Source: Schmidtea polychroa
Lineage: Eukaryota
Assembly (NCBI GenBank): GCA_044892525.1
Contig: CM097885.1
Span: 34,844,001 to 34,908,000 of the forward strand
DNA: 64,000 bases
Direction of reading: 5' to 3'
Positions 24,101 to 55,795 of this stretch are shown here, in pieces. Every line of letters starts with the position of its first letter. Position 1 is the first letter of the stretch. The notes beneath the pieces were generated by a model that made no database searches, was not told the DNA's origin, and saw nothing but the letters and a program-made list of their open reading frames with translations. A program made the position numbers and the translations under genes.

Positions 24101-24329
24101 TATTGGGGATACATAATCAATTATAGGTAAAATAACAAACGCAAGAAGTTACAATAACTGACATTCAAAAATACACATTAAAAAACTGCCAACTCGAAAA
24201 GAAAGGAATAAAAATAAATGAACGAATTAGTAAAATCGAAAATTAGAAAAGATTGCTAATCAATTGCATGTGTGACTCATGATATGTGAGCATGGCCTTT
24301 GTAACCCAGAATACAATGGTCTTTTACCG

Positions 24330-24470
24330 CTTGATATTCTTTCAATGATCAATGTTGGTATTGTATCAAGTAGGTGAGTACCAGCAAAAAGTGAGCGAAC
24401 CTATGTACACTATAATTGGAGGGTACTCGCATGAATTTGCGAACTGCCGATAGAAGACCTATGTCGACTT
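24330..24470 (+). ncRNA. Candidate structured RNA module, copy M1 (subfamily B, partly decayed)
   Basis: CTTGATAT...GTTGGTATT-GTATCAAG hairpin, GTGAGTACC/GGTACTCGC stem, GCCGATAGAAG. Confidence 0.5.
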
Positions 24471-24671
24471 TCGACTGGTCCCTATCATACTAACCACTTT
24501 TCTTGACGGTTCGGCTCTTATTGTCATCTTTCCCCTTAATTAATAATCTAATGAACTCCTAGAATATAAAACAAATTTTATTAATAAAACCACACGAACT
24601 AATACACAGATTATTACAGTTCAGTAGATATCAAAATTTTTCGGCTTATCTTTACCCGCGCCCATTCGGTT

Positions 24672-24989
24672 TTACCGAGGCCTTTCCTCTTCGATGCTGA
24701 CGACCACTGTTACTTCGGTAATGCTGCGCCACTCCCTAGTCAATATTCTGTTGATTGAGTTGTGTTTCCAATATACACCAATGAGCGCCTTTACTTCCGC
24801 TTGATCTTGAGCACTGTGAAGTTGCAGCTGTTGGATCAGCTACAGACGCTTTTGCATTTCGATGGGACTGAACTAGGTGCCTTCGAGTTCCCGACACCGT
24901 CCCTTGAATTTTTTCACTCGCAGCATTCACTCCTCTGTTTGCTTTTGTGCCTGCTCCCTGTCGGCTCGTAGGTTCTCCATTAATTGCAT
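24672..24989 (-). pseudogene. Distant, stop-riddled homolog of the LTR-borne antisense ORF
   Basis: MQLMENLRADREQAQKQTEE*MLRVKKFKGRCRELEGT*FSPIEMQKRL*... retains the LEGTWFSPxxM signature (W to stop). Acceptor TTTCTGTTTTTAG lies 2 nt before the ATG, and module M1 is ~200 bp downstream as in the other copies. Confidence 0.6.
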
Positions 24990-32369: not shown

Positions 32370-32503
32370 TGTTTCCAGTATAACACAAAATACAATTGTT
32401 ATTACCACTCACTACACGTCGATTATTCAACGTTGAAACTTATTAAATAAGTGAATACTTTTAAAAGTGAGCGCATCCCTCTGCACTATAATTGTCAAGC
32501 AAA
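32370..32503 (+). repeat. Decayed partial copy M2 of the subfamily-B module
   Basis: GCTGTTTCCAGTATAACACAAAATACAA...TTCAACGTTG...AAAAGTGAGCGCA...GCACTATAATTGTCAAGCA aligns with 60067-60200. Confidence 0.6.
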
Positions 32504-35393: not shown

Positions 35394-35556
35394 CTTTTGT
35401 TCAACCAGATAATTTTAATGAAAGAATTGAAAGCGAAGTGAGATAAATGGGTCGACGTTTGGATCGATTGATGTCAAAATTTGAATCAGAAGATTTATTC
35501 GGTAGTAGATATGTCGGATTGCCCAGGTGCGTATCCGAGTAATTTAAAAATAGAAA

Positions 35557-36009: not shown

Positions 36010-36206
36010 TCGTGATAACGGCAAAGGTGGTAGTGTCACAGATGCTATCAGTACATCGAATATCTGCAATATCTGGATGGTCATGGAAATTGATTATTGA
36101 CTGTATTCCATTGTTGGCTAGATTCTTTATGCTGGGTAATTAGGGTAGTTATTAGTACACTCAGTCTCTTCCCCTAACTACCGTTCATGGTTTGCTAATT
36201 GCCATG

Positions 36207-36341
36207 CGTATACCCCTGATGATGTTTCACGTTGGTGCGTATACGTAGGTGGGAATCTGTGGACAGGTGAGCCTCTATGTTAAGACTACTCGCCACAGTA
36301 TTCTCGGTACGGGTTCCTAGGTGCCAATAGAAGGACTTAAC
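36207..36341 (+). ncRNA. Candidate structured RNA module, copy M3
   Basis: CGTATAC/GTATACG around CC-CTGA..TCAC-GTTGGTGC; CTGTGG/CCACAG around AGGTGAG...GACTACT; GCCAATAGAAGGACTTA. Confidence 0.6.
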
Positions 36342-36713
36342 ATTTTACTCATTACCTCGTCTCTGGTCCAAGAAGACGGTATTCAAATTTCTCTGTTCAA
36401 GGGATTTTGATTTGAGCAATCTCATTTCGGTCAATCACACTATTTCACAATCTCATATTTCAGCATTTCCACATTTTTAAATATATTTTCATATAAGGAT
36501 CTATTGACTACGTCGAGGGAGGTTATACTACAAAACAGACAAGAAATCATCCGACACTCAAAGTTTTATTACGAATACACGATCGAAATTACATTAGACA
36601 TCAATAAGAAAAATAACAATCCGGTTGTCAATATCTACAATGTTCTATATTTACATATGAATTAACGAGATATTTCTAATATTTTGTCGTGCGCTTCCAT
36701 CCGAGACATTTCT

Positions 36714-37444
36714 TCACATGGTTTCTACCTCAAATAGTAGTGCATCCATGTTGACCTGCAACCAAGGATCTTTTGGAGGGGTCGTTACAGTTGACGAGAT
36801 TATTCGAAACGAATCCGATGCCGATACTGATGAAGGGTTGGCGCCAGATTGTGCAATTGCAGATTTTGCGACAAATAGTGATGCCTCCAGTTCATTCACC
36901 TTTTCCCTCATTTTTGCTGTTCTTTCTGCTCGAGAAGGTCGCTTTCGTTTTTTCGGCCGTAGAATCGGCGCGGAAGATACTTGCGCGGATGAAGAACCAG
37001 TGGTGACTGTTCCGATTAAAATAGGATCAACTAATTTTGGTACAACCGGTCCATACCCTGCACAAAGAGATAGCGTTGCACTATTTAGTTCATCCGCTAA
37101 ATTGTGAAGCCGAAATACGTTCACGCCATCCTTGATTGGATATTCTCGGATTCTTCTTTGCAACTCAGACTCGGTATATATTTTATGTAGAGCCTCGGAT
37201 TGAGCTTTAATACTTAGTCACTGTCCACGGCTTTCTTCCAGGAGACTGTCACGACAGTGCTCCAACCTGAGAATCTTCATTTTTTCCTCCTTCATTTGTG
37301 GCGGGGAGTACCACGTAGCTTCCAGCGTTTCGACACGTTTTTTAGAGCCCCAATGTACTCATGTAATTTTCGTATGTCTTCGTTCTTATCGGAGCACGAG
37401 AAACACGGTCTCGGCCCTTTTGGTGGAAGATTCGGTTCCGACAT
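36714..37444 (-). pseudogene. LTR-borne antisense ORF, copy 1 (one frameshift, one stop)
   Basis: MSEPNLPPKGPRPCFSCSDKNEDIRKLHEYIGALK/KRVETLEATWYSPPQMKEEKMKILRLEHCRDSLLEESRGQ*LSIKAQSEALHKIY...KKRKRPSRAERTAKMREKVNELEASL...NMDALLFEVETM. Confidence 0.85.
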
Positions 37445-38228
37445 ATCTAGAAGATAAAAGCTATTGATAATTCGTTACTCTTTACGTCTCAACATTGCTC
37501 CGACATCGTAACTGGTTTCGGAAATTTTCATGTTCTCGGGCACCCACAAAATGAATCGAAAATTTATTTCTCTATTGGGGTACTTGACCCTAAACGCACA
37601 TTCGCAACTAGTTTAATGCCGGGAAGAGGCTTGATGAAAATGACAAGTGAAAAATTTTTAACTCGTATAAATAGGCAAACTTTAATTGGATACACCTTTT
37701 AGTTATGTTTCATTACATTATTACTACAATAATTCTCAGGGTTGGAAGTTATGATTAATGAAGAATGTTAGCCGCAACAACGTCGAATTCATTTTCAATC
37801 TCCATAATTAATAAATTAACCAAATAAAATTACTAAATTAATTTTATTCACAAAACTGCGCTTTTTTGTAATATTCAAATAACCTGTTCGAGGCTTTTTT
37901 ATTATTTTAATGTTGATGCTGATTTCAATGCTGGTTTAATTTATTTTAATATTTAATATATTTTTATATTTTAAACTTACTTTAATTTATTAATTTAAAT
38001 ATTTATACAAAAATTTATGTAATCTGATAAATACAATTTAAATGTTTATTAGCAATATTCAGTTTTAACTTAAACGTGAATTCTATCCTTTCATCCCCCT
38101 TCTTTAAATTCTTTAATCTTTTCAATATTCCTGATTAAAGACTTCCCACTTTTATCTCTCAGCATATAACTGCGATCGTGTATTCGTTTTGTTACCGTGT
38201 ATGGTCCTTGATATCTATCTTGATCCTG

Positions 38229-38641
38229 GTGACCCGTCAAAATAGCCCAAGACAAAATAGCCCCGTCAAAATAGCCCCGTCAAAATAGCCCCATCATAAA
38301 TAGTATATAGTAGTATATAATGAGGGGTGGCTAAAACCCCAAAAATTTTAAAGTTCACATTTTCAAGATGGCCGTCCCACCTCATCATTCGTAGTGGAGG
38401 TTCTGCGTTATTGTATGTAAAATCGACCATGACATTTTAATTAAATTCTCCGTCTTACTATTGACATATGCTCGGCTACTCCGTAAACGAGTCGCGCTGG
38501 CTGTGGTACATCGTGGTACCTCCACTACGAATGATGAGGTGGGACGGCCATCTTGAAAATGTGAACTTTAAAATTTTTGGGGTTTTAGCCACCCCTCATT
38601 ATATACTACTATATACTATTTATGATGGGGCTATTTTGACG
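38229..38641. mobile_element. MULE-like foldback element inserted in the gypsy integrase
   Basis: Perfect 124-bp inverted repeat 38278-38401 / 38518-38641 with tandem GTCAAAATAGCCCC terminal motifs. The right end is truncated and adjacent integrase sequence is deleted. Confidence 0.8.
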
Positions 38642-39840
38642 ATGCATTAAGTAAATCTCTTATTGTCCGGAATTGTCTTTCGATTATACCATTCGTATTA
38701 TGATAGTATGGGCTCGAATACACTATCTCGAACCCTGCATTTTTGCTTATAAACTTTATGCTATTAGCTTCGAATGTTTTCCCGCAATCTACATGTAGTT
38801 CTCTGGGTGCCCCAAATTTAAGAATCCAGTTGTTTAACAATATCTTCCCAATTGTCTCTTCATCCTGTTTATTTATTGCTGTTAACGAGATGTATTTGCT
38901 GTAATGGTCGATTATTGCGCAAATGTATCTTTTCCTGTTAAATGTTTCTTTCATTGGGCCACATATGTCCATATATATTTTCTCAAAGGGTTCGGATGCT
39001 TCAAGTACTTTTGGTTTCTCTTTCATCTTTGTAGTTACAACTTTAACTTTTTGGCACGATTCACAATTTGATATTGTCGTTTTACCTCCTTTATTAGATC
39101 TCTCATATCAAAATTGTTTTGTATGTATTTGATAACTTTGTCAACTCCAGCATGGCACAGTAATAGATGTGTTTTGATAATCATTTCTCTTCTTTTGCTT
39201 TCTGGTATCCATATTCTTTTATATTTGGTATAAATAATATTATCCTCTATTATAAACCTTCCACTCGTTTGCGTTATTTTATTTTTAATCTCCTCTATTT
39301 CATCACTATTCATTTGCCATTCCTCTCCTTTGTCTTCAGTTATTATATTTAACAATCTGGTTTTCATTATTCCCATTTTAGGATTATCGTTTTCCATAAG
39401 GCATTGTACACATATGCCACACGTTTTCATCGATAACATGTCTGCATTAGTAATACTAATTTAGTATGTAGTGTACCCTTTCTAAATTCCATTTTTATAT
39501 CAAGGCTACTTAAATGGTTTATCCAGCTCTGGAATTGAGCTGTAATTGGCTTCTTCGTGGTTAGCATAAATGTTGTTGCTTTATGATCTGTACGTAGTGT
39601 AAATCTTTTTCCATATAAATAGTGATTGAAATGCCGACAAAAATAATATATAGCCAGGAGTTCCTTTCTTGTAATACAATAGCCTCTTTCGTGGTCATTC
39701 ATCGCATGTGAGCCATATGCGATAACTTGCTCATGCTGGGCACCTGGAAGGACGGTTAATGATTAATGCGACTAGGGTTTATCGTGGTGATTCATTTGTC
39801 CCAGATGCCAAAATGATTTGTCGACCAGATATTCCCTCCT

Positions 39841-39972
39841 GTGTGCCCATGACTACGAGTCATATTGGTGCTGTACACCGAGGTCGGAACCTGTGAGCAG
39901 GTGAGCCCTGTCGCCAAAACTACTCCTCACAGCATTCGCGGTTCGGGTTCGGAAGGCCGTAGAAGGACTTAC
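39841..39972 (+). ncRNA. Candidate structured RNA module, copy M4
   Basis: GTGTGC/GTACAC around CC-ATGA..TCAT-ATTGGTGCT; CTGTGAG/CTCACAG around AGGTGAG...AACTACT; GCCGTAGAAGGACTTAC. Confidence 0.6.
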
Positions 39973-40219
39973 ATCACTAGAAAAGCCGCCTAGGTCGTTA
40001 TATCTTGTTACTTACAGTGTCAAATTCAACATTCCAACAACTAGTAAAAACGAAGTAAAATATAATTTCCAAACACAACATGAATTAATAATTAAATAAA
40101 CACAAGGTCCATAAAGGAGTCACATTGAATTACAGAAAATATACATATTGTCTGCCATGAGGTGGGCGTGATATTACTGGGAGGATTGTGATGAGAAGTT
40201 ACTGGAAGCTGGCTACTTC

Positions 40220-40963
40220 CTAGATCATCTCTCCTTCCGCTAACATCGCATCGATGTCGCACTCCAAAGCAGGATTGAAAGGTGGTTGAGAGGTGGAGAC
40301 AGGCACAACTTTGGCAGGAGCGATGATCTTAGTCGCTGGTGTTTCCTTCGCCTGAGTGGCCGCAAATAATGTCGCCTCGAGGGCTGCCATCTCTTCTCGG
40401 CGTTTCTTTGTTTTCTCGGCCCGTGTTAGCCGTTTCTTCCGTTTCGGTTTCTCCGGTAAAATGACTGGCTGCGACGTTGATGGGTTCGATGAAGTGGTGA
40501 CTGGCAGTACAGTAGTTGACTTAGTAGCCGCAATGATGTCGGTGAGAGCTGGGGAGACTGGAGTTGGGCCGTGGGCGCCGCAAAACGGATGCTGATTGGG
40601 TTTGGGAGTAGGTAGATCATGATGTATAGGGAAGAGATTTCCTTTGTCTAAAATTGGATATTCGGCTACTCTCGCCTTTAGTTCGGCGTCGGAGTAGATA
40701 CGATGGAGGGCAGCCGACTGTGCCTTAATGGTGAGTCTTTGACTCAGATTTTCTTGTAACAAGCTGTCTCGGCAATTTTTGAGACGGAGAATCTTCATGC
40801 GCGCCTCCTTCATACTGGCAGGGGTAAACCATGTCCCCTCCAGCGTGTCGATCTTTCGTTTTAACGACCCAATATAATCAGCTGAATTCTTCAGAAGGGC
40901 ATTTTTGTCGGCACACGAGAAGCACGGTCTCGGGCCGGTTGGAGGAAGGCTTGGTCCAGTCAT
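40220..40963 (-). CDS. LTR-borne antisense ORF, copy 2 (intact, 247 aa, unknown family)
   Basis: PCFSCADKN, coiled coil, LEGTWFTP, CRDSLL, Pro/Ser/Thr linker, basic KPKRKKRLTRAEKTKKRREEMAALEATL, acidic end DIDAMLAEGEMI. Conserved in three other copies. Confidence 0.85.
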   Translation of the reverse strand: MTGPSLPPTGPRPCFSCADKNALLKNSADYIGSLKRKIDTLEGTWFTPASMKEARMKILRLKNCRDSLLQENLSQRLTIKAQSAALHRIYSDAELKARVAEYPILDKGNLFPIHHDLPTPKPNQHPFCGAHGPTPVSPALTDIIAATKSTTVLPVTTSSNPSTSQPVILPEKPKRKKRLTRAEKTKKRREEMAALEATLFAATQAKETPATKIIAPAKVVPVSTSQPPFNPALECDIDAMLAEGEMI

Positions 40964-43900
40964 TTGTTATAGTCAAGTTTACTGAAAGAAATATATGTTT
41001 ACTTCAATTAAAATCTCTTATTTTAAGAAGCGGGTCTTTTCCATTTCATTCCCCGTGAATTCACTACTACACGCATCCTCCACATACATCATACTTTATT
41101 CATTCAAATATATGATCCATACACGCAAAATTATTAGCGTTTAGTCGCCTCTATTTGAGCAAAAAGGGGTGGCGGGGCTCCGATCGTGAAAGCACAAAAA
41201 AATCAATTATTTGCCCCATAAAATCAATTTATTAAAAATTAAACAAGAAAAATTGTAATAGGATTATTTATGTATCGATTCTTTCGCAACTCGTCCGTTC
41301 CATAGTATTTGTTAGAAATGTAACTAATGTCTTTTGCCCATTTATCCTACCCGCAAGAGCTCACCCTAATTCAGTCTAAACCTTGTGAATGCAATTTATT
41401 TGTTCGTAATTGATTTTCAAAAATTTTAATCATTTTATTTAACTACAAACCCGTTAAATTTAATTACGACGTTTACTGGAACGGTATGCAGAGATCTGCT
41501 GTTAATTCAGAATAGCGTAACTCTTGATAACACCGAAAAACAAAATCCGATTAGTGCCCATACTGCTGAATAGTAATTACTGCCGAAAAACTCTCATGAA
41601 GGAAGCTTATCAGACGTGAAGCGCGAGAATTGGAGATAAAGGCTTGCTGCTTATCTATTTATCTGTGTGAATCGTAACATTCGGAACGAGTATGACGGGA
41701 AATTCACAAATCGACAACAGTGAAAATATTGGTGGACTATCGCTTATTCAGATTATTTTAATGTATTCTAATAAGCCAGCTATTGTTTCTCATCTAGTTT
41801 GTGCATATCCTTCTTGCAGTGACGTTTCAGTTGATTGACATCTACATCCATCGGAAAAATCTACTTCGGACAAATTTAACACCTATCTCTCTTATTCCAG
41901 AGTTGTACCAAGATACTAAGGTAAAAGGAGACTCATTTACTAACTGGAAATAAATACTTCAATACGCCACTATTAAGCTGGTTTTTCGTTCAGATCCGAG
42001 AGATCATTTAACAGAGTTCCGTTACCGAGTTGGAGCATGAAGTGGTGATTATATAATAACACTCTACTTCCTTCTACTGGGATCAATCATCAATGCGAAC
42101 ATCGACAAATTCCGGACGTCCTCCCAGCTAATCAATCCCCGAAATCATATGCATAAATTACTATAATAATGAGAATCTAAATATCTTCGTGTCGAAAATC
42201 AAACAACCAACATTTCGTAGAATTCAAAATAATTTATTTTCATATATTCACATCTTTCTACATTGGGTTCAATATTGATATAAATCGTTGCACATTCTTC
42301 AGGTTCAATACTCCCTTCATTACGAATTTCATAAATACATCATTCTACAGCTACTCAACTTCCTGAAACCACATTTAATTGTTGTCGAAAAAATAAGAAC
42401 ATTATTACTACTTAAATTACAGTTTAAAATAGGATAATATTTACCATAGCATTCAAAATTATTTACGTAATAGCATTACAAAATCAAAATAATCTCTTAC
42501 ATTTCCTTTAGATTTCGATGCTGGCGAATAGAATAACTGGTTCGGCTGATGATGCTATTGAATAAATTTTAAAACTATTAAATTGATGATTTAGCTTACC
42601 TATTGATTAAATTTTAAAACTATAAACTAACTGTTCCGCTTTTCTTATATATTAAATTCCGACCAATCAGAATTCAACGCGGTTGTAATATTTTAATTTT
42701 ATTGGTTTTCCCTTTTTTTATTCTTCTTTTATTTTCTATTGTTTTTTGGTGGTTTTATTATTAATTTATTTTTTATTCTTAATTTCCTTTCGTTCGTCGA
42801 TTTTTAAGTAATTTTTCGTATTTTTATTGATTTTTTCTTAATTCTTATGGTTATTTTTAGGTTTATTGTTTTTATCCTGATTTCCTGTGCTAGCTTTTTT
42901 ATTATTTTTTTTTCTATTTTGTTAGGTAATTATTTTTATTAATTTCCTAGTTTCTCTTTCTCTGGGGTAGTTCCCCCCTCTATTTTCTGCTAATTATAAA
43001 TTTAAGTATTATTATTTATTTTGGATCATCAGCCCAACACTCATATCCCATGTCATTCTTCTGTGATAAAACTGCGCCGATTGTATCGAAACTTGCGTCC
43101 GTATCCAGTATGAATTCTTTCTTAAAATCTGGAAATACCAAAATCGGTGCGGTTATTAATGCCAACTTCATAATCTCAAAAGCCTGCTCACAATTTTCAT
43201 TCCATATTATTTTGTCGCTATTTTTACCACATATACTCTCTAAAGCTCTTGTCTTCTTTACGTATTCTTTAATAAATTTTCGATAATAGTTGCAAATACT
43301 CAAGAAACTCCTTAAATTTTTCACATATTTCGGCCTTTGAAATGATTGAATAGCTTCAATTTTGCTCTGATCTGTTTGGATGCCGTCTCTATTTATAATA
43401 TGGCCTAAGAATTTCACTTCGCTTTTCAGTATTTGACATTTTTCAGGAATAATTCTTATTTTCTGCAATACTCTTTCCAGCAGTTTATAGTGTTCTTCAA
43501 TTGTGTTAGTAAAAATTAATAAATCGTCCAGATAAACCATTACCGCGTCTTTCCATAAATCCCTTAATATCTTCGTCATGCGCTCTTGAAAAGTTCCTGG
43601 TGCTGCCGCGATGCCAATTTTATGTTGAATTAAATCAGTGCATCCAACATCCCACTTGTCAGCCATGAAAACACATTTATTTCTCTTGATAATTTCTACA
43701 AGCAATTTATCTTTTACTTTCAACTTCTCTATCGCATGTTGGAATCTTTCTTCATTTGTAATATTCCTCCCAAATTTAGCATCAATTTCACATATACGTT
43801 CGTTAGATATCATTTCACCTTCTTGAAATCATCTTAATTCAATACCGAATTGTTTCTGTAATTCTATACCCCCAATAACATCTGGGACAATGTTTTGTAC

Positions 43901-45096
43901 GACGGTAAAGGTCACTATTTTTGTTAGCTTCTCTATCTTTACCTCAATTTGAACTTTTCCTATAGTCTCCAATTTACTGTCATTTGCACACTTTAGCATT
44001 TCATCTGTTTTTATAATCTCGACTTTGTCCAATTTATCCAGTACTGCTTTAGACATTACATTAACTCGTGCTCCTGTATCTAACAGACACTCGATTCCGC
44101 GCCCTTGAATTTTAAGTGTTATACTTGGTCTACCTTGCATTTTATGATAAGTCATACGAGGTCCTTTCCATTCGTCTTTCGTAAATATATTTTGTTCCAC
44201 TTTGTTCTTTATACTATTGGAGATTTCATTAATCCACCCAATCTTATCTTCATTCATATCAAATGACTTCTTAGAAAACTATATACTTTTTCTCCTGTTC
44301 TTTCATCGCTACACATTATTTTGCTGTTTTCATTTCTATGATCTATACTGCTACTTTTATAAACATTAAAATTAGTTTTATCATCCATATTATTACATAA
44401 ATCTTTACTAAAAAAATTAAAATTATCTACACTATTCAAATTATTTACATTATTCAAATTATTTACATTATAAAAATTATTTACATTATTATAACCAGCA
44501 TTTTCATGAAAATCATCATTACCTAATAAATGGCTCCTATCATCGCCTCCTGTGATGGAGCTTCCTCGTTTGGGTATTGCATTTCGACGTATTTTTCCTT
44601 GGCTTCACTTGAATAATCCAGTTGATAGTTACCATCTTGATTTCCAATTGCTGCTACCTCTCTTCTGTTATACTGATTGTTCTGTTGAAATCGGCCCCCT
44701 TTATTTCGGTGTGTTGCATTAGTTCTTCCGTAATGATTCATTTTTGGCATAAATCTTTCTAGGTTTGTATAACATTTAGTTTCTTTGTGACCTTGTAGAT
44801 GACATCTCCTACACTGAATGTTTGGACATTCTCGGCGTACGTGTCCATATAATCCACATCCAAAACACTGAATCCTCCTCTTCATAGTACATTCTTGGCT
44901 TAAATGGCCTGGTTTTTGGCATGTCAGGCATACGACGTTCTTAGTCGCTTCCGGTGGTTTTGATATTGGTGCTGGGGTACTACCCGGTTGACTCAAACGA
45001 CTTTTAAGTCCCGTCTAGAGGATGATCGTCTGTTATACTAACGTCTTCCATTTTTCCGTCAACCTCGAGTAGAACTCCACACGATCTACACTCCAA

Positions 45097-45237
45097 CATA
45101 ATACCCATGAACTGCTTCATGTTGGTACTGTATTATGCCGGCGAGACACCAGAAAACAGGTGAGCCCCTGCCTTAGGACTACTCCTTTCTGAGGGCTCGA
45201 CTTCTCTTTCCCCATGACTGCCTATAGAAGGTCTTAC
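45097..45237 (+). ncRNA. Candidate structured RNA module, copy M5
   Basis: CATAATAC/GTATTATG around CC-ATGA..TCAT-GTTGGTACT; CAGAAA/TTTCTG around AGGTGAG...GGACTACT; GCCTATAGAAGGTCTTAC. Confidence 0.6.
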
Positions 45238-45517
45238 GTCTCACTACTTCTCTATACTCGATACTCCATCGTTTCCTGAGTTCGGTACCCGTTATATACT
45301 ATTTGAAGATTTCAGTCAATAAAACCATTCCTTCCTGGTGGTGGAGAAAAAAGCAAATAACAACACACAAAACAAAACCCAATGATTTAAACAAAATTTA
45401 TTTACTAAATGGTCAATATACAAGAAAACATAGATACTACAAGCAAAACAGTTCATCACATCAGAAAAAGTCGCAAGAGTTAGGACTAGAAACTTCAGCC
45501 TGCACAAGAGGAACTGG

Positions 45518-46271
45518 TCACTTTTCCCATTCCGTTTCCGTTAATAATGCATCTAGATCGAAAAATTCGGACGCATTCTCCTCCCACGTGATGCCAGCCG
45601 CAGAGATAATACGCCCCGGAATTCCGGTGTTCACACTAGGGGTGGGAGCAACACTACCTCCCGATGATTCAACAACTGAGACTCGCTTCTTCTCTTTCTC
45701 TACAATTCTTTCCTTTTGCTTTCGTTTCTGTTCGGCTCGGGATAACTGTCGCCGTTTGGGCTTGGAAGAGGAACTGATAAGGGGGGGGGGGCGGTGCATT
45801 AGATGTGGAAGCAATTTTTGGATTTACTTTGCTGGTGCCCGTAAAGATTACGTCTTTGGGTTTGGGCGAGAGCTCCGCCTCCACACAACCTCGGCATGAT
45901 TTCTCCGATGTTCGAGGTCTATTTGGAGTCCGATCGTGATGAGTAGGGAACACATTGTCCTCCTCAGTGATCGGTATGCTCGCGATCTTTCGAGTTGTTG
46001 CGGCTTGCAAGTATACCTTATGTAGAGCCATTGATTGCTCTTTGATAAGGATACGTTGTGATCTACTTTCTGCGATCAGGCTATCGTGGCAGTGTTCGCT
46101 TCTATTCAACTTCTTCACTTCTTTCATCTGCACTGGGCTAAACCATGTGCCTTCTAATTCGTCGATCTTGCGTTTCAGCAGTCCGATTTGGGCTTGCAGT
46201 CCCTTGATGGCCTCATTCTTATCTGCACACGAATAACAAGGCTTAAGGGAATTCTTGGTGACTGGGTTCAT
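45518..46271 (-). CDS. LTR-borne antisense ORF, copy 3 (one frameshift in a G11 run at 45781-45791, possibly a sequencing error)
   Basis: PCYSCADKN...LKRKIDELEGTWFSPVQMKE...CHDSL; after the shift, KPKRRQLSRAEQKRKQKE...FFDLDALLTETEWEK. Confidence 0.8.
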
Positions 46272-48871
46272 GATCGTTAGCTATAAAAGAAAACAGATAT
46301 AGGGAGTGATTATCTATAATCCACTTCATCTGTAAGCAGATCGTACATAAAAATAAACATTAGCCATCGTACGGCCCATTTGATGCACCTATAAAGTTTG
46401 CGCAATCAGAAAGACGACACTGTACCGACAAGAGAAACTCAACCCCAGACGATCTATTAGACTAGCGCAATTTTGTATTTATGGTAAAAGGTACAATTCT
46501 ATGGCATCACACCCATATTTATCTGGATTCTTTACCCGAAATTTGAAGTACACCTGAACAATTATTGGGATTTACTATTATTACCATCCGATAGTGGATA
46601 GGTACTTATTAAGATTATTAAACAACAAAATAAAATATATAGGAAGGTAAATTAAATCAATCCTTATTTATTCCTATCCCAGATCATCAAGTAACAAACA
46701 TTTTAATTCAAAAGTAAATAAATTCATTTATTCTTAATGTGAAATTTCAATTATTTCTATCTGTAACGGGTTTTTAGTCTGTATGTTGGTAAAGATAATA
46801 GTTTATGAATCTACAATTGGTACTCAGCTGCTTGTTGTACATGCACTCGGTAGGGACTATGGTGTTTGTGACATGAGGGTGGAATCGAAATTAAAATAAA
46901 CAGAAAACAGTGTTTATCTAGCCTGCTGATAAAATAGTGGTGGTTCTCAGGCACTACCGGATGATCTATTCATTATCTCGATTTGTATTTTTCATGTGGC
47001 TATTCAAACGGATCGATTCTTGTCATTCGGTACTCATCAGACGGCATAGGTGGTGTTACCCCATCCGTTTAGACTAGGTTATGTATATCATAATAAAAAG
47101 TCACCATGTTACCTGTGTTTTTGCTCGCTCTACGTGCTTTCCTCATGGAGTATTTTCGCATCTTACCGACATGCAAGTTTTATAGTGGAACGGTCAACTA
47201 TCATAAAATCATAGAAATTATCGGTGCCTATGGTGACTATGCGACTGATTAATAGATATTAGTAGATTGTTCAATGTATTTTCGCAGCATGCTGTTCCTA
47301 GTGCGTGTATCGACTCAATTGGAATTATTCAAAAGGAAACTCGCTACTCGTAGAATCACGTTCGGGCTACTCGATGATCAGTCCTAACTTACAATGTTCT
47401 AAATACTATCAACAGGTAGGAAAATGGATCACTTTCGCGAGTGAATTTAATTTTGCGTTTTGTTGACCCAGAATAAAATGTACATAATCGTTTTTCGTGT
47501 CTATTTTCGAGTATCTGTATCGTAAAGAGGTGCTGAAAAATGGACTCATGCTAATTTAAATTATCTGAGGAGAATATGAACGGTGAGACAGATCTTATAG
47601 AGTTATGATGAATTGGAGAAGATTGAAATAAATTTGATTTTTGTGTGATGATACTAGCGTGAGTGCTGAAAATTAGATGAGATTCACATTGTACTGCTAC
47701 TTATGAGGATATCCTAAATCAAATGTCGCTCGACGAAATCTACTTTCGGATTAGTAAGTGGTTTTAAAATATAGTTCACCCTAGCTGAGATTTTGTGCTT
47801 TTAAATATGTGATGGGATGAATAAGGTAAAGTGACGAATTTCGCGCGAAAATTTCAAATGTAGAGCTAGTCCAAGATCGGTTAAGGAACATTTAATCACG
47901 ATAGTGTGCGACACCCTCAATCACTGTGTAGACCTACTCATGGCACTTCCTGCCTCCTTTATTCCGATAATGCTGTCTCTTTCCTACTACTCTACATTGA
48001 CCTTATTTTTCAATAGTATCTCCCGCTAATTTATGCGCATCTTCAGCGACGGACCCGTGAGGAAGCCCCCACATTTCGGCCCGAATCAGCTGCGTGACTG
48101 AAATGCTCCGTACCCACCGGCTGAGCACCCGAAGGCTCCTCACACCATGGTATGAAACATTTCAGCTCCAAGTTACTCAGTAATTTTCATTAAAACAAAA
48201 CATAAAAACTCGCATCAAAATGGCTATTAATAATTCCGTCATAAAAATAAATATTTAATTACATCGAGTGAAAAAGAAGAAATGTTTTCAAATTTTTAAT
48301 TTTACATCCAAATATATTTACAAATAATTACTGTCATAAATTACCAAATCATACCAAATTATAATGAAAAAACAAAATTTTACCAATATATCCGTTCAAA
48401 TATTTCCTGGTAGGTAAAAATCTGAGTCTGAAGTTTGGTTAAGATAGTTAAATAATCTTCGAATGATTTGCGGGCTGAATCGATTTCCTCTGTTTCTCCT
48501 AGATTATCCTGATAGCTAATATGTTCGAATGCTAAAGCTGAATCGTTGTTTGATTGACACTAGTTAGTTATTTTGTTAACACTGAATAGTCGTATGGGTG
48601 AATCCATGGGGGGGGTTTCAGAAAACATATTTTGTATATGTATTTTTATTTTTTCACGTAATAGCTAGCACTATTTACCAAATTATATTTCACTTTATTT
48701 CAATATAAAAACAATTACCTATAGGTATATTTTTCTCTCAACTTTTTTATAGAAAATTGTAAAGAAAACTAAATAAAAATTTATTAAGAAATATGAATAA
48801 TAATTATACATTATAAGAAAAATTAATATAAAAGTTTTATTAGAAAAAAAGTAATATAAATAAATAAATAC

Positions 48872-50297: not shown

Positions 50298-51371
50298 TGG
50301 CCTGCCGAACTTTGATTTGAACTTCGATTCGGACCAAAGTTCAAACACTTCGGACTTCGGCAATAGACCCTGTACGATCCAAATAGTGAAATTTTGCTTG
50401 AGCGATAATAAATTATTATTGTTCCGTGATTATTTACATTAAAATTAATGGCGACACGCAAACAGTGAAAGTAAATAAAATCTTAGTTGTTGTTCATTTT
50501 TCTTTACTATCGATTTTCCTTTCTACGGCTATGTCATACGAACACTGACAAGTCTAGCCTAGCCGTGGCTGTGTCGCTGTGTACACAATAGCCGTTCATG
50601 TTCATGCATCTCTATTCTCTACACTATAGCAGCCCTATACGTCAATCTCCGACTATTCTTAGCATAATCTCGATTGATTCGAGCCACGATATCGGGGGGC
50701 AGGCGCTTGAATAGGCATGGCTTGCGAGGCTGAGGCTACTGTAATACCACAATCAATTACCGATCGCAATCTAATAGGCCTAATAATAAATTTACTCTTT
50801 CCGAAATTTATTGCTTGGGCACTATTAGACTTGACTACTGTCAAGAGAGAAATATCACATAATCTACACATTTAAATTAATGTTGAGCACATTTAAATTT
50901 ATTATGTCATCTATCGTCTCTGTATGTCGACTCTCCAATCTTATTGCATGCCTGATGGAAGCAGCACAAGATGCCACGCGCGTGTATGCAGTTCAACCGA
51001 GTGCATATGTCAATGTCATGCACGATGATGTTCGTATACCGTACCTATCGACTTTATCGACAATAATACTTATTATAAAATTATATAGAAATAATTGTGT
51101 CATTTTTCTGTCATAAAATTGTGTGTCATAAATGAATGATTTATTCATTAGGTAAAATATTAGACTGAGCAGAACTGCCAGTTGAGCATCCGATTCACTT
51201 TCCACATCATCACATGCGAAAATCTCCATAGCTCCATACCCCTCCCCAGTGTACTGTTGGTGTATGAAGGGGGGAAGGAAATTTTCTTAGTCAGGCACAC
51301 GATCTCATGCATTAGACTCAGACTTATCCCAACATACATCACATGACTTCGTTAATATTCCCTCATGCGAG

Positions 51372-51500
51372 CCCGTGGTGATGTTTCCACGTTGGTTCTG
51401 CCCACACGGGTTGGAGTTGGTTAATAGGTGAGCCCCTACCTTAGGACTACTATTAACCCCCTCGCGGTACAGGTTCTAAGGTGCCTTAGAAGGACTTACC
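51372..51500 (+). ncRNA. Candidate structured RNA module, copy M6
   Basis: CC-GTGG..CCAC-GTTGGTTCT; GGTTAATAG/CTATTAACC around GTGAG...GGACTA; GCCTTAGAAGGACTTACC. Confidence 0.6.
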
Positions 51501-51760
51501 CTCAATCTCATACATCCTCGGGTCGACCCTGGTCCAAATGGACGACCTTCATACAATGCCAAACATTTAGTTCATCAATCGAATCGGGTGTTTCACTCAT
51601 CGTTCACGTAAAATAACTCATTAAACATCGAATAATTATATTAATTTTACAACACACATTACACAATCACTAAAGATAAAATGAGAAGTTGTCATATTCT
51701 AGAGAGGTGGTTGCGAATACCTCCGACAAGGTAGATCAACACTGTCGTCACCTCGCGTCA

Positions 51761-52498
51761 TTAAAAGACTTCTCTGTCCACTGGCAGGCGACGGTCCGCG
51801 AGATACTTGATGTCCTCGGCCGGTACGATTCGAAATATTTCTTTGGCCGGAATCACATGGGAACTAGAAATCTCTTTGAGGGTGGACTGGGCCACTGATA
51901 GTGAAGCTTCCAGCGCTGCCATCGCATCCCTGCGCTTCTGATTCTTGGCGGCCCTGGTTGGCCGTTTCTTTTTGCGAGAAGGTATCGGATTATTTGTGAT
52001 GGACGCGGCAGAGGGTGCCGCCAGGACTGGAGCCAAGATAGGGTCGGAAGAGCCACCTACTAAGGGTTGTTGATCGGATAATACCGGAGCTGGGATGGGC
52101 GGCAGATAGGAGCCATGCCCTTGACAGTTTGATGCAGACGCTTGAGACGTCTGGTGGTGTAGTGGAAATGCATTAGTACTATCAAAAACGGGAAATTCCG
52201 GAACTCGTTTGGCCAATTCGGCCTCCGTGTAGACCTTGTGGAGGGCTTCAGATTGCGCTTTAATTGTCAGTCGTTGACAACGGCTCTCCTCCAGCAGGCT
52301 GTCCCTGCAATGCTCCAACCGGAGGATCTTCTTTCGCTCCTCCTTCATCTGTGGCGGAGAGAACCACGTGCCCTCGTAGAGGTCAATACGCTTCTTCAGA
52401 GCCCCAATATATAGATGTAATTGGGCAATATCCGCGTTCTTGTCTGCGCAAGAAAAACACGGGCGAAGCTCCTTGTTAGTGTTGGACGATGTAGACAT
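51761..52498 (-). CDS. LTR-borne antisense ORF, copy 4 (245 aa, open; C-terminus divergent)
   Basis: PCFSCADKNADIAQLHLYIGALKKRIDLYEGTWFSPPQMKEERKKILRLEHCRDSLLEESRCQRLTIKAQSEALHKVY...RKKKRPTRAAKNQKRRDAMAALEASL. Confidence 0.85.
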   Translation of the reverse strand: MSTSSNTNKELRPCFSCADKNADIAQLHLYIGALKKRIDLYEGTWFSPPQMKEERKKILRLEHCRDSLLEESRCQRLTIKAQSEALHKVYTEAELAKRVPEFPVFDSTNAFPLHHQTSQASASNCQGHGSYLPPIPAPVLSDQQPLVGGSSDPILAPVLAAPSAASITNNPIPSRKKKRPTRAAKNQKRRDAMAALEASLSVAQSTLKEISSSHVIPAKEIFRIVPAEDIKYLADRRLPVDREVF

Positions 52499-55400
52499 CT
52501 AAAGATTGAATAATTTTCATGTTCATCCGTAATATTCGTTTATGTGACATTTACAATAGGGATACGGGCGTTGTAATTTTATCAATCATCCTACCCGGTG
52601 ATGCCCCGAAAATCTTTACCATTCATCTGTGCTCACATTCATTTAATCATCAACATTCAATTTAATTCACCCAACCCATGCAACTTGAAGAAAAGAAAAC
52701 GGGGAATTCTCAAAAAGGAACTCACTGGGTATGAACTCAACCTTTAGATTTACTTTCGGATTGGACAATTCCAATCTACTATACGTTTATGCATTCAGTA
52801 CGGTCAATTCTATCCCCTTTATTATTTGTCGCAATTTTGATAATTAAAATCTCGTTACTATGTTTTGTGAATTTGTGCGTATGTAATACTTATAAAATTA
52901 TAATTTCATGTCACTGGCGTCTACCCGTGTCATATTAATTACGATTAAAGTTATAAAAAAGACTGAAATATATATTAACTAAAATCATGTTATAAATTAT
53001 GTTTAATTATTTTAAATCTTTCACTGTAAGTGTTGTCATGGAGACGCCTACTCGTATGTAGTTATGTATTGTTCTTATTTTCTATGCATGCTGATATTCG
53101 TCATTATATCTGTTGAGGTGCATGTGTTATTTAATTTGTTATCAGCCTGTGCCGGTGTAATATCTAATGATTCTGTTATTTTAACTGAAGACATCAAATT
53201 CTTTACTCCTACATGCAGTCTCACCAATTCAAAGATAGTCCAGGTTGTTGTGTCATTGTATGTACTGTGTTCCACTAGGTGAGGTGTACGTGTGTTGTTG
53301 TGAATGGTGATCGATAAATATGACGTGGTGTTTGGACGTTTCAGTAGCTTAACTTCAATCGACGTCACCGAAAATTTGCTGCTCTAACTGCAGATTAATT
53401 TATATGTTGTCTGGTGGAAATTTATCTAGTGCGCACACATGTATTTATACTCTCAAGTCAAAACATTTGGAATCCCTGCAGGTTTCCCCAGAAAATCAGT
53501 AATATTAGACGAAACAGGGAGAGAAAATTGATCGTAACGAGTACGGGGTCAGTTATGAGTCTACTTGATTCTACAATCAGATTCCCTTCTATCATGTTAG
53601 TTCAAGATAACAACTGTCAATTCGTTCGCTTCGCGACATCTACCAGAAACCGATACTCAAGATCTCTTATCAAACTATTATCGACTATTTACTACGCCTG
53701 ACTCTAAACTGGCTGAGATTGACCGACGATTTCGCGATATCTCCGACGACTGTTTCTTTTAGACTCGTGGTAAGTGTTTTGATAATTTATCACGAAATGT
53801 TTACTTTACTGACAGGCGAAACGGTTTTCGCTGATTACGGTGAATCAAGAGCGACAAGTTATCCTAAAAGTGCATCGATGATGAATCTGACTGCTAATGC
53901 CCTGGCGATACAAATCCTGGAAATCTTCAATTCTTATGACAATTAATACGAGTCTTGTTGGAATCTTTACGAAAAATAAAACTCCCTATTAACGGATGTT
54001 TAAACAACTGCTGTTCGAAAACGTAAGCAATGGTCCGTGCCAACTCTAAGCTCAATAGGATGCAATTGGATATATGGCAGAAATGATTACCAATTGGAAA
54101 ATTTTCCTGGGATCCTCGGTGGGTTCATTATTGGCATTAAATTTTGTGACTGCGAATTTTCGATGGATAGGATCTCTACGACGACAATTATAATTGATCT
54201 CACCCGATGAAGAATTTTTCTCAACGCATCTATACCTCTCGCTAGATGTCCTCACCCCTCCTGACCCACCTAAGAGCGGCAATCATCGCTGCCACCGCCC
54301 TTAGACCGCCAGGAGGGACGATTCTATCTCCTCAATCATTACAAACTTGTATTCATAAAAATTTATTATAAAGTTGACTGATATGATTAAATAAATGTTT
54401 ACATTCGTTGCAAAATTATTTACTATATAAAAGGTTACTTGCCTGGCGACCACGCCGTCTGAGTCTCAAATATGATGCCGTTTCAACATAATCGCAAGCG
54501 CTTAACCATTTAAATTTGTAGTAATACTGACTTTATCCAGATTCTCAATATCGCTTCTAATAGCCATTCTCGTAGCTTCTCCAGATTTATTTAAATTTTC
54601 CGCATCATATTGGATTCTCAGACGACATCGTCGCCAGCACCATAGAGAGAGAAATACCTTTGGAAATGCAAATAAGTTTATTAAAATTAAAATATTTCAA
54701 CCATTATACGTATATATTACAATCATAAAAATTCATTCGTCTTACTGTGAATTAGTTGAAAATCGGGTTCAAGTTTCCTGTTAATTGGTATTTTCTCCTT
54801 AAGTAATTCGATTCCCTGTCGTAAATAGTCTGCTGCTAATTGTCGATCCTGTGTAAGTGTCTTCCTGTTATATTCGGTGCTTGGTATAATTTAGAATTGA
54901 GTGTCTGCAAAAGTGGTTCCTGTAGAGCAACGATTAAAAGTGGTGGTGACAAATAAATTTTTTACCTGTAGAGCAACGATTAAAAGTGGTACTCTACAGA
55001 TTTTTCTCTTTCGTTATATATTATTCTTCGTCCAATCAGGACTCGAATTGTGTGTAATATTATTATTTATTATTGTTTTTATGTTTTTTAATGTATTATA
55101 CTAGATTTTTATGACTTCTTTTATTTTTATTATTGTTTTATTTATTTTCCTATTTTTTCTTATTTTTCTCCTGTTTTTTCCTGTGAATTCATGGTTATTT
55201 GGTGATAGTATAATTTTTTGTTTTAATTATTCCAAGTGTTTATTTGAAAATGGCTTTATTTCTATTTATTTCTTGTTTATTTTCCTTAATTTCTGTTATT
55301 CCCTTTTTATTGTTATGTATGTTAGGTAACTTTCCTTTTCTATCTTATTTTTCATCTTATAAATTTCATTGTATTATTAGTTATTTTTATTTCCTTTATA

Positions 55401-55795
55401 ATCTTATTTCTTTTATTGTTTTTCCCAATTTAGTAATTCTTATAGTTTTTCCGCGATTTTTATGAAATTTATTTTTCCTGTTTATTTATCCCTAACCCGA
55501 TTTTCAACATTCTCAAAATTTAGCCCAACAAATCACTCCGGGGCCCGTTAAAATTGCGTCCCGCAATTTACATAATATCATACACTCCGATCATACCTTC
55601 TCGGTATTACACATAACTCACATTCAAAATTCACACAAACACAAAACTAAAATTAACTAAAAAATACTTTAATTAAACAGATCAAGGACAAATATAAGTA
55701 AGCAGTAGCCACTTAAGGTGACCGGTTTCATCATGTACACAATAAAACATCAATAATTTGTCAATAGTTATAGTTCGGAATGTTATGCTTGGTGT

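What the first reader, a model, noticed from the sequence alone, without database searches (positions are those of the whole stretch)
39734..43039. Giant (3.3-kb) solo LTR that encodes its own antisense protein: a complex-retrovirus-like regulatory cassette
Seen: TG...CA ends, a perfect 4-bp TSD, no gag/pol, and an intact 247-aa ORF on the opposite strand with its own acceptor and a minus-strand AATAAA-rich region after the stop. Paralogs at 36714-37444, 45518-46271 and 51761-52498 keep CxxC (PC[FY]SC[AS]DKN), a coiled coil, E[GA]TW[FY][ST]P..MKE, C[RH]DSL, a basic KKRKR..RAE..KKR block and, in three copies, an acidic D[ILM]DA[LM]L..E end, while flanking DNA is barely alignable. That pattern points to purifying selection. 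Orientation comes from copy 1 (env-PPT-TG), which places the ORF antisense in a ~2.9-kb U3. Established analogies: HTLV-1 HBZ (antisense from the 3' LTR), MMTV sag and HIV nef in U3, and giant multi-kb-LTR gypsy ('Burro') elements of Schmidtea. Inference: a nuclear regulator (NLS/DNA-binding plus acidic activation tip) or anti-silencing factor that survives in solo LTRs, so LTR-LTR recombination does not remove it.
Basis: partly seen in the sequence, partly recalled or inferred. Interest (0 to 1): 0.88.

Follow-up and report, generated by a model that had tools for sequence, protein, structure and literature searches.

The report
Giant solo LTR with accessory gene
A 3.3-kb retrotransposon terminal repeat, left on its own inside another dead retrotransposon, carries an intact and conserved 247-amino-acid gene with its own promoter, intron and a structured RNA, but the evidence offered for the gene being "antisense" does not hold.

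Summary
The sequence-level observation holds. Window 39734-43039 is a clean insertion with TG...CA ends, an 8-nt terminal inverted repeat and a perfect CTCA duplication. It sits in the RNase H region of an older minus-strand gypsy element. It has no gag or pol and holds an intact 247-aa ORF on the minus strand.

Four further copies of the ORF exist (one intact, three broken). The pattern is that of a protein under purifying selection, although synonymous sites are saturated. About 15 unnamed, chimeric predicted proteins elsewhere share the N-terminal domain. Pfam, PDB and viral-fold searches gave no named hit.

New here, all on the ORF strand:
- a GATTGG/TATATAA promoter island conserved between the two complete units;
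- a splice donor about 45 nt downstream of the TATA;
- an acceptor 1-20 nt before the ATG in all four copies;
- a 140-nt two-hairpin RNA with strong covariation, present in seven copies.

The "env" is an internal fragment that follows gag zinc knuckles directly, and no purine tract adjoins the TG. No AATAAA follows the stop on the ORF strand.

Most likely this is a solo LTR of a giant Burro-like gypsy element whose accessory gene lies on the LTR's sense strand. This remains unproven, because the window holds no paired LTRs.

The parts
39730..39733 (.). Left copy of the 4-bp target-site duplication (CTCA)
   Evidence: the identical CTCA lies at 43040-43043
43040..43043 (.). Right copy of the target-site duplication (CTCA)
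   Evidence: host pol is colinear across the insertion
39734..43039 (-). The 3306-bp LTR-like unit (probable solo LTR). Its ends are TGCTGGGC and GCCCAACA, an 8-nt inverted repeat with one mismatch. The strand given is the proposed sense strand.
   Evidence: no terminal direct repeats inside; no gag or pol
42645..42670 (-). Promoter-like island: GATTGG (inverted CCAAT) followed by TATATAA, about 390 bp from the unit's high-coordinate end. The only other match in the window is at 55014-55039(-), in the other complete unit.
   Evidence: 2 matches against 0.01 expected; the pattern was derived from these two copies
42594..42600 (-). Candidate 5' splice donor (G|GTAAGC) about 45 nt after the TATA. 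Copy 4 has AG|GTAAA at the aligned place. It lies in a 45-bp tandem duplication (42555-42644).
40982..42599 (-). Candidate intron (1618 nt), or outron if the acceptor is used for spliced-leader trans-splicing. It contains all five minus-strand AATAAA hexamers that lie downstream of the TATA.
   Evidence: inferred, no transcript data
40982..40990 (-). Splice acceptor (TTCTTTCAG) 18 nt before the ATG. An equivalent pyrimidine tract plus AG precedes the ATG in all four ORF copies.
40220..40963 (-). Intact 247-aa ORF. It has an N-terminal CxxC and a helical hairpin (residues 15-41 and 49-89), a disordered linker (102-166), a basic helix (181-206) and an acidic-hydrophobic tail.
39838..39976 (-). 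Conserved 140-nt structured RNA block (two hairpins), downstream of the ORF and about 100 nt from the unit's low-coordinate end
51288..55530 (-). Copy 4: a second complete unit of about 4.2 kb. It has the same TGTTGGGC terminus at 55530, a degenerate other end and no matching duplication. It holds an intact 245-aa ORF at 51761-52498, an RNA block at 51364-51504 and a promoter island at 55014-55039.
36130..37850 (-). Copy 1: a truncated unit whose upper bound is approximate. Its ORF at 36714-37444 is broken by one frameshift and one stop. Its RNA block is at 36208-36345 and its end TGCTGGGT is at 36130.
44970..46420 (-). Copy 3: a partial unit with uncertain bounds. Its ORF at 45518-46271 is broken by one frameshift. 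Its RNA block is at 45096-45241.
24329..24980 (-). Fifth, decayed copy: an RNA block at 24329-24466 plus an ORF remnant upstream of it on the same strand, with at least 3 stops in 67 codons
38091..44996 (-). Host element: a small Ty3/gypsy with zinc-knuckle NC, protease, RT-RNase H and integrase. It lacks the capsid part of gag, is split into at least six ORF pieces, and is interrupted once by the 3.3-kb unit.

Best explanation
39734-43039 is a solo LTR of a giant Ty3/gypsy-type (Burro-like) endogenous retrovirus-like element of a flatworm-type genome. It was left by LTR-LTR recombination after the element integrated into the RNase H region of an older small gypsy element.

This LTR family carries one transcription unit on one strand:
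- a CCAAT/TATA promoter about 390 bp from one end;
- a very short first exon with a splice donor;
- a 1.6-2.5-kb intron (or outron);
- an acceptor just before the ATG;
- a roughly 245-aa ORF;
- a 140-nt two-hairpin RNA about 100 nt before the other end.

I take that strand to be the LTR's sense strand. On that reading the promoter is the LTR promoter, and the ORF is a sense-strand accessory gene in the transcribed part of the LTR rather than an antisense gene. The hairpins would then be a leader-type cis element.

The protein probably self-associates through its helical hairpin and is probably nuclear through its basic cluster. It probably binds nucleic acid with the basic helix. My best guess is that it regulates the element's own RNA or transcription, possibly through the adjacent structured RNA.

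Shown: the insertion, the ORF family under constraint, the promoter-like island, the splice-site motifs and the RNA covariation.
Inferred: LTR identity, the sense orientation, the splicing and the protein's activity.
For: Insertion and LTR hallmarks:
- TG...CA ends, an 8-nt inverted repeat, a perfect 4-bp duplication, and host pol colinear across the gap.
- No internal direct repeats, gag or pol.
- The size fits the LTRs implied for Burro elements (internal region up to 25 kb, total over 30 kb; PMC6431247). Burro-type pieces lie nearby: gag followed by a mononegavirus-type fusion protein, and zf-TRAF/MATH plus coiled-coil ORFs.

ORF constraint:
- Copy 2 against copy 4, N-domain: pN 0.25 against pS 0.92. 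Differences by codon position are 33/18/55.
- Eleven invariant columns across 11 proteins at 23-43% identity.
- Five copies in at least two LTR subfamilies.

Same-strand signals:
- The promoter island is found only in the two complete units, both on the minus strand.
- The donor is conserved. The acceptor is present in 4 of 4 copies.

Structured RNA:
- 26 pairs, 18 with compensatory changes. 91.6% of cells pair, against 72% in shuffles (0 of 500 reach it) and about 40% when partners are slid.
- Minus-strand consensus energy is -21.5 against -11.2 kcal/mol for the plus strand.
- About 20 G.U cells on the minus strand against 4 on the plus strand. Z-scores are lower on the minus strand in 4 of 4 copies tested.

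Sense orientation:
- Only one conserved promoter exists in the unit.
- No other conserved island could serve as an opposite-strand promoter.
- The promoter-proximal region is A-rich on that strand, like the sense strands of the gypsy genes here.
- One block-bearing LTR end (60105-60241) lies just upstream, on the same strand, of Burro-type accessory ORFs.
Against: - The window holds no pair of these units flanking gag-pol. No primer-binding site or purine tract adjoins any copy's end. 'LTR' and its orientation are therefore not demonstrated.
- An antisense cassette with its own promoter would show the same three conserved features.
- A sense reading implies a short U3 (about 400 bp) and an unusually long transcribed part (about 2.9 kb).
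- No canonical poly(A) hexamer follows the ORF on its strand in copy 2.
- The predicted first exon is only about 20 nt.
- There are no transcript or protein data.
- Half of the AlphaFold model is below pLDDT 50, and fold searches are non-significant.
- dN/dS itself cannot be computed because synonymous sites are saturated.
- All outside homologues are unnamed, chimeric gene models without DNA context.
Confidence: 0.55

Rival explanations
1. The LTR's sense strand is the plus strand. The ORF is then an antisense gene inside a roughly 2.9-kb U3, driven by its own antisense promoter in the R/U5 end of the LTR, in the manner of HTLV-1 HBZ.
For: - The LTR would have a conventional layout, with a long U3 and a short R-U5.
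- Plus-strand TATAAA and AATAAA hexamers exist near the 43039 end in copies 2 and 4.
- The minus-strand promoter, splice sites and structured 3' region fit a self-contained antisense unit equally well.
Against: - Its only positive evidence (env-PPT-TG at copy 1) fails.
- The plus-strand hexamers are not in alignable sequence and are expected by chance in DNA this AT-rich.
- It requires the essential sense promoter to be unconserved while the accessory promoter is conserved.
- The RNA block is kept in LTR copies whose ORF has decayed or is not detectable. That suits a core LTR function better than an accessory 3' UTR.
- No bZIP or HBZ similarity was found.
Confidence: 0.27
2. It is not an LTR at all. 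It is a non-autonomous DNA element moved by a retroviral-type integrase or transposase (Ginger-like), and it carries a passenger gene.
For: A 4-bp duplication and TG-initiated termini are also features of Ginger-type elements (from established knowledge). No paired copy around gag-pol was seen in the window.
Against: - The terminal inverted repeat is only 8 nt, not tens to hundreds.
- There is no transposase or integrase ORF.
- The unit has a TATA promoter near one end and a structured RNA near the other, as LTRs do.
- It sits among gypsy and Burro-type fragments.
Confidence: 0.05
3. The structure is as in the best explanation, but the protein is a structural or particle-associated product rather than a regulator. 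It could be a leader-encoded, gag-associated adaptor.
For: - Some outside homologues carry a proline-rich PPPY stretch after the shared domain. By established knowledge such motifs occur in budding (late) domains.
- The ORF would be the first cistron upstream of gag on a sense reading.
- Helical hairpins are common oligomerisation modules.
Against: - The window's own copies lack that motif.
- The basic cluster and acidic tail look more like a nuclear factor.
- No similarity to any Gag family was found.
Confidence: 0.08

Closest known systems
Burro / GYPSM1 giant Ty3-gypsy elements of dugesiid planarians (Grohme et al. 2018, as summarised in PMC6431247)
   Same: - Multi-kb LTRs are implied by the published sizes.
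- The genome context is AT-rich.
- The window holds gag zinc knuckles followed by a mononegavirus-type fusion-protein fragment, and zf-TRAF/MATH plus Smc-like coiled-coil ORFs. These are the unusual domains described for Burro.
   Different: - The description I could read does not report a protein-coding gene, intron or structured RNA inside the LTR.
- Membership of this LTR in a Burro family is inferred from neighbourhood and size. It was not shown by a paired full-length copy.
- The primary paper was not held in the library.
MMTV sag (superantigen ORF inside the LTR, sense strand)
   Same: A sizeable ORF lies wholly within an LTR, is reached through a splice acceptor, and so is retained in solo LTRs. 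If my orientation is right it is also on the sense strand.
   Different: - By established knowledge sag lies in U3, upstream of the LTR TATA. Here the TATA lies upstream of the ORF.
- There is no sequence or fold similarity.
- This protein has no signal or membrane features.
HTLV-1 HBZ (antisense bZIP factor transcribed from the 3' LTR)
   Same: A small regulator-like protein with a basic region and an acidic segment. It is spliced, with a promoter at an LTR end.
   Different: - The antisense orientation is not shown here and is less likely than sense.
- No bZIP or HBZ hit was found in Pfam, PDB or viral folds.
- By established knowledge the HBZ coding sequence lies mostly outside the LTR.
Extra ORFs of LTR retrotransposons (rotifer Vesta/Juno ORF3 including coiled-coil types, PMC5408684; plant Ogre extra ORFs, PMC6431247)
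   Same: Lineage-specific accessory ORFs of unknown function, some of them coiled-coil, expressed from spliced messages.
   Different: Those ORFs lie in the internal region, so they are lost when a solo LTR forms. Here the ORF is inside the repeat.
Rev/Rex-type RNA-binding regulators with a cis RNA element
   Same: A basic (arginine/lysine-rich) helix, a helical oligomerisation module, a short hydrophobic-acidic tail, a neighbouring conserved structured RNA, and an element that seems to splice.
   Different: - The resemblance is functional only.
- One outside homologue gave a sub-threshold Pfam REV match (E 0.0013), driven by its arginine run. The window protein gave none.
- SIV Rev models appeared only at non-significant rank.
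- Binding was not tested.

Membership tests
Solo LTR of an LTR retrotransposon | TG...CA termini forming a short inverted repeat | tested here: met
   TGCTGGGC and GCCCAACA
Solo LTR of an LTR retrotransposon | 4-6 bp target-site duplication at an otherwise continuous target | tested here: met
   CTCA on both sides. Host pol is colinear across the gap with a related element.
Solo LTR of an LTR retrotransposon | No gag/pol and no terminal direct repeats inside | tested here: met
Solo LTR of an LTR retrotransposon | The same unit occurs as a near-identical direct pair around PBS-gag-pol-PPT | tested here: inconclusive
   There is no such pair in the 64-kb window. The copies differ by about 30% even in their best parts. 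Outside DNA context could not be obtained.
Solo LTR of an LTR retrotransposon | Promoter and polyadenylation signal on one strand | tested here: inconclusive
   A conserved GATTGG/TATATAA island lies on the minus strand. The only minus-strand AATAAA hexamers after it lie in the candidate intron, and none follows the ORF.
Burro-type giant gypsy element (as its LTR) | LTR flanks a polyprotein with gag, accessory domains (Smc, MATH/TRAF and others), an in-frame env-like region and pol | tested here: inconclusive
   Such pieces are in the window, and one LTR-end block abuts TRAF/MATH ORFs. No contiguous element is present.
Antisense LTR gene (HBZ-like) | ORF on the strand opposite to gag-pol of its own element | tested here: inconclusive
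No own gag-pol was found. Indirect evidence favours sense.
Antisense LTR gene (HBZ-like) | bZIP domain or sequence similarity to HBZ | tested here: not met
   No Pfam, PDB-sequence, PDB-fold or viral-fold hit
MMTV Sag-like LTR ORF | ORF located in U3, upstream of the LTR TATA; type II membrane glycoprotein | tested here: not met
   The TATA at 42645-42651 lies upstream of the ORF. The model has no membrane segment and there is no Pfam hit.
Ginger-like DNA transposon | Long terminal inverted repeats and an integrase-like transposase (or clear derivation from such an element) | tested here: not met
   The inverted repeat is 8 nt only, and there is no integrase ORF. The 4-bp duplication alone is shared.
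Rev/Rex-like RNA regulator | Arginine-rich RNA-binding helix that binds a structured cis RNA of the same element | not testable with these tools
   A basic helix and a covarying RNA are both present. Binding is unknown, and there is no family hit for the window protein.

The most novel reading that the evidence does not exclude
Giant planarian-type endogenous retrovirus-like elements carry a complete regulatory module inside their LTRs. The module comprises a spliced (or trans-spliced) gene for a dimeric basic/acidic nucleic-acid-binding protein plus its structured RNA target. This would be an invertebrate, independently evolved counterpart of the Rev/Rex- or Tat-type circuits of complex retroviruses. 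Because it lies in the repeat, it would persist and could stay expressed from thousands of solo LTRs.
Probability: 0.2. Interest if true: 0.8.

Novelty: new variant of a known kind. Interest (0 to 1): 0.6.

Why it matters
Accessory genes of LTR retroelements normally sit in the internal region and vanish when a solo LTR forms. A conserved protein gene inside the repeat itself would survive that recombination. Here it comes with its own promoter, splice sites and a covarying RNA structure.

Every solo LTR would then be a potential expression unit. The protein could act in trans on related elements or on host genes. The case would also add an invertebrate example to the short list of LTR-borne genes, alongside MMTV sag and the LTR-overlapping genes of complex retroviruses. 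It defines an unannotated protein family and an unannotated RNA motif, and both can be searched for in flatworm genomes and transcriptomes.

Tried and rejected
- Pfam on all ORF copies and on 11 family members gave nothing beyond the host parts of chimeric models.
- The PDB sequence profile matched only the actin part of one chimera.
- Foldseek against PDB and BFVD gave nothing significant, only generic helical hairpins.
- Rfam on 35-56 kb gave no family. ARAGORN found no tRNA, so the block is not a tRNA-derived module.
- The word-indexed protein search with the single ORF gave no hit. With the family alignment it returned only unnamed chimeras.
- Context look-ups for homologues and for the window ORFs found nothing on record.
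- Viral and metagenome contig scans found no relative.
- I considered that copies 3 and 1 are the two LTRs of the host gypsy element, since both flank its gag-pol in the same orientation. I rejected this. They are not alignable at DNA level. A relative of the host has 220-bp LTRs. The host's own purine tract and AT-rich end lie at about 38.1-37.85 kb.
- I considered copy 1 as the 3' LTR of the plus-strand gag/env element and rejected it.
- dN/dS could not be computed because synonymous sites are saturated.
- The primary Burro paper could not be read.
- The bacterial-type promoter and terminator scan was uninformative for a eukaryote.

Full report
CONTEXT. The window is AT-rich, at 15-41% G+C in 2-kb bins. 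From about 34 kb onward it is a nest of retroelement fragments. Host-type exons lie elsewhere: EGF repeats at 9263-9706 and an RNase H2 subunit-B-like ORF at 31520-32215. The window has three runs of N, which I left untouched.

THE INSERTION IS REAL.
- The unit begins TGCTGGGC at 39734 and ends GCCCAACA at 43039. These ends form an 8-nt inverted repeat with one mismatch. CTCA lies on both sides.
- It interrupts a minus-strand Ty3/gypsy element. That element has zinc-knuckle NC at 44996-44523, protease at 44257-43829, RT/RNase H at 43813-43040, and integrase pieces from 39439 down to 38091.
- A related gypsy copy at 5553-7016 aligns to both sides of the gap (5946 with 43051, 5961 with 39726). 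The 3306 bp plus one CTCA are therefore exactly what was added.
- Inside there are no terminal direct repeats and no gag or pol. The only long ORF is the 247-aa one.
- A solo LTR is the simplest reading. A Ginger-like DNA element is unlikely, because the inverted repeat is only 8 nt and there is no transposase.

THE ORF FAMILY.
- ORF 40220-40963(-) is intact. No shuffle of the unit or of the ORF's own composition reached 247 aa.
- tblastn finds four good copies in the window and one decayed remnant:
  - 51761-52498, intact, 245 aa;
  - 45518-46271, one frameshift;
  - 36714-37444, one frameshift and one stop;
  - a remnant within 24780-24980, with at least three stops in 67 codons.
- The copies share 36-44% identity overall and more in residues 12-115.
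- Between the two intact copies the N-domain has pN 0.25 against pS 0.92. Differences fall 33/18/55 on codon positions 1/2/3. This is a clear protein-coding constraint. Synonymous sites are saturated, so a dN/dS value cannot be given.
- The constraint reflects the history of the active lineages. It does not show selection on this particular copy.

OUTSIDE RELATIVES.
- An exhaustive phmmer search of 1.8 billion representatives gave 10 hits (best E 1e-11). A profile search added five more.
- All are unnamed UniParc entries. In each, the shared domain is fused to actin, phosphatase, subtilase, transporter or hAT parts. They look like gene-model chimeras around repeat copies in draft genomes.
- Across 11 sequences at 23-43% identity, eleven columns are invariant (W45, P48, L68, E71, Q75, R76, Q82, S83, L86, P112, H115 of the window protein).
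- The CxxC is specific to the window's copies.

PROTEIN MODEL. With that alignment AlphaFold gives:
- a confident helical hairpin (15-41 and 49-89, pLDDT about 85-90);
- a disordered linker (102-166);
- a confident basic helix (181-206);
- a short acidic-hydrophobic C-terminal helix.

Pfam, PDB sequence, PDB fold and viral-fold searches return nothing significant. No relationship to HBZ, Sag, Nef or Rev came back.

NEW: THREE CONSERVED NON-CODING FEATURES, ALL ON THE ORF STRAND.

(1) Promoter island and donor. About 390 bp from the 43039 end, the two complete units (copy 2, and copy 4 at 51288-55530) share an island with GATTGG and then TATATAA. It lies at 42645-42670 and 55014-55039, both on the minus strand, and there is no other match in the window. 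About 45 nt after the TATA both have an AG|GTAAG-type donor. The donor sits in a short tandem duplication.

(2) Acceptor. All four ORF copies have a pyrimidine tract plus AG 1-20 nt before the ATG. This fits cis-splicing of a 1.6-2.5-kb intron. Because the acceptor sits so close to the ATG, it also fits spliced-leader trans-splicing, which is known in flatworms (established knowledge, not tested here).

(3) Structured RNA. A block of about 140 nt downstream of the ORF is conserved in all copies and in three further LTR fragments: 39838-39976, 36208-36345, 45096-45241, 51364-51504, 24329-24466, 60105-60241 and 27389-27529.
- It folds into two hairpins.
- 18 of 26 pairs show compensatory changes.
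- 91.6% of cells pair, against 72% in column shuffles (0 of 500 reach it) and about 40% when partners are slid.
- The minus strand is favoured. Its consensus energy is -21.5 against -11.2 kcal/mol.
- It has about 20 G.U cells against 4 on the plus strand.
- Its single-sequence z-scores are lower in 4 of 4 copies tested.
- Rfam has no match.
- A covariance model finds one further weak hit at 32407-32546(-).

WHAT IS NOT CONFIRMED.
- Copy 2 has no AATAAA or ATTAAA on the ORF strand between the stop and the unit end. The minus-strand hexamers lie upstream, in the A-rich promoter region and the candidate intron.
ORF 35557-36009(+) is indeed a mononegavirus-type fusion glycoprotein (PF24664, E 1.6e-19). 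However, it covers only profile positions 414-557 of 653 and follows gag zinc knuckles (35058-35393) after about 160 bp. It has no continuation.
- No purine tract adjoins the TG at 36130.
- It is a rearranged internal fragment. In Burro elements env lies between gag and pol anyway (PMC6431247). It therefore says nothing about which end of the LTR faces the 3' side.

ORIENTATION. This is not settled, because no copy adjoins a recognisable primer-binding site or purine tract. I favour sense (about 65%) for four reasons.
- The unit has a single conserved promoter, and an LTR must keep its sense promoter.
- No other conserved island could serve as an opposite-strand promoter.
- The RNA block persists in LTR copies whose ORF is decayed or undetectable. 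That suits a core LTR or leader function.
- One block-bearing LTR end (60105-60241) lies just upstream, on the same strand, of zf-TRAF/MATH and coiled-coil ORFs (59.7-55.8 kb). These are the kind of ORFs described as Burro accessory domains (PMC6431247).

A weaker argument is that the promoter-proximal region is A-rich on that strand, like the sense strands of the gypsy genes here. Against this, a sense reading gives an odd LTR with a short U3 and a transcribed part of about 2.9 kb. An antisense cassette would show the same conserved features.

MECHANISM (committed, with likelihoods).
- Solo LTR of a giant gypsy-type element: about 0.8.
- The ORF is expressed as a spliced or trans-spliced message from the LTR strand that carries the TATA: about 0.6.
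- That strand is the sense strand: about 0.65.
- The protein is a self-associating nuclear nucleic-acid-binding regulator of the element's own RNA or transcription: about 0.35.
- It acts through the neighbouring structured RNA: about 0.2.

COMPARISON AND NOVELTY.
- The closest known analogue for a gene inside an LTR is MMTV sag. Here, though, the TATA lies upstream of the ORF and there is no similarity.
- HBZ is an analogy only if the gene is antisense, and its defining bZIP domain is absent.
- The extra ORFs of rotifer and plant elements lie in the internal region, not in the repeat (PMC5408684, PMC6431247).
- I found no description of a gene, intron or structured RNA in Burro LTRs, but I could not read the primary paper.
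- I rate this as a new variant of a known kind, of moderate to high interest for mobile-element biology.

- None was entered into a tool or used as evidence, and none is written here.
- In my early reasoning I also paraphrased the conserved RNA block from the consensus line that an alignment tool had printed. That line was not used for any tool call, result or statement in this report.
- The DNA pattern searched is the set of positions identical in two copies.
- The outputs list per-frame alignment bounds for the two broken ORF copies. I do not repeat those bounds.

Noticed in passing
window 34117-36009 (+): Gag-like ORFs with two CCHC zinc knuckles (35058-35393) are followed after about 160 bp by a fragment of a mononegavirus-type fusion glycoprotein (PF24664, profile 414-557 of 653). 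This gag-then-env order matches what is described for Burro elements. The fragment ends about 120 bp before LTR copy 1.
   Followed up: partly
window 55796-59700 (-): A run of long minus-strand ORFs: a TRAF-type zinc-finger region, a MATH/TRAF domain (58658-59446, E 1e-25) and lysine/glutamate-rich coiled-coil ORFs. They are intronless and strongly A-rich on the coding strand. They resemble the accessory domains reported in Burro polyproteins and lie just downstream of an LTR-end RNA block (60105-60241).
   Followed up: partly
window 61069-63015 (-): An intact 648-aa ORF with a weak hAT C-terminal dimerisation match (E 0.007). It is probably a hAT-family transposase or a gene derived from one, lying upstream of the 60-kb LTR fragment. 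A shorter hAT-like N-terminal fragment may lie at 49591-49920(-).
   Followed up: no
window 3206-7585 (+): A small gypsy element with 220-bp LTRs (3206-3425 and 7358-7585, 91% identical) plus protease and integrase ORFs. It is 65-69% identical in pol to the element that hosts the 3.3-kb insertion. This shows that the host family has short LTRs of its own.
   Followed up: partly
window 38278-38401 and 38518-38641: A perfect (100%) 124-nt inverted repeat with 116 nt between the arms. Such perfection in an otherwise decayed region suggests a very recent event or an assembly artefact.
   Followed up: no
window 42555-42644 and about 54920-55000: The candidate splice-donor region is tandemly duplicated (45-bp unit) in copy 2, and a similar duplication is present in copy 4. 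Only the first unit keeps a GT after the AG.
   Followed up: partly
window 32407-32546 (-): A weak eighth match (23.9 bits, rough E 3e-5) of the covariance model built from the LTR RNA block, in 27% G+C sequence. It may be an old decayed copy.
   Followed up: no
window 42540-42553 and 43025-43038: A 14-nt stretch just downstream of the candidate donor is 93% complementary to the LTR terminus. Matches of this size are common in the unit (19 such pairs), so it may be chance.
   Followed up: no
proteins P0001-P0015 (outside homologues): Every homologue of the LTR protein in the public protein sets is an unnamed UniParc entry. In each, the shared domain is fused to an unrelated host domain. Several carry a long arginine run and a PPPY stretch that the window's copies lack. 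One gave a sub-threshold Pfam REV match (E 0.0013) through the arginine run.
   Followed up: partly
window 36130-55530: All four LTR units, the host gypsy element and the TRAF/MATH ORFs share one orientation (minus) over 25 kb. This could reflect orientation-biased retention inside a transcribed host region, or it could be chance.
   Followed up: no
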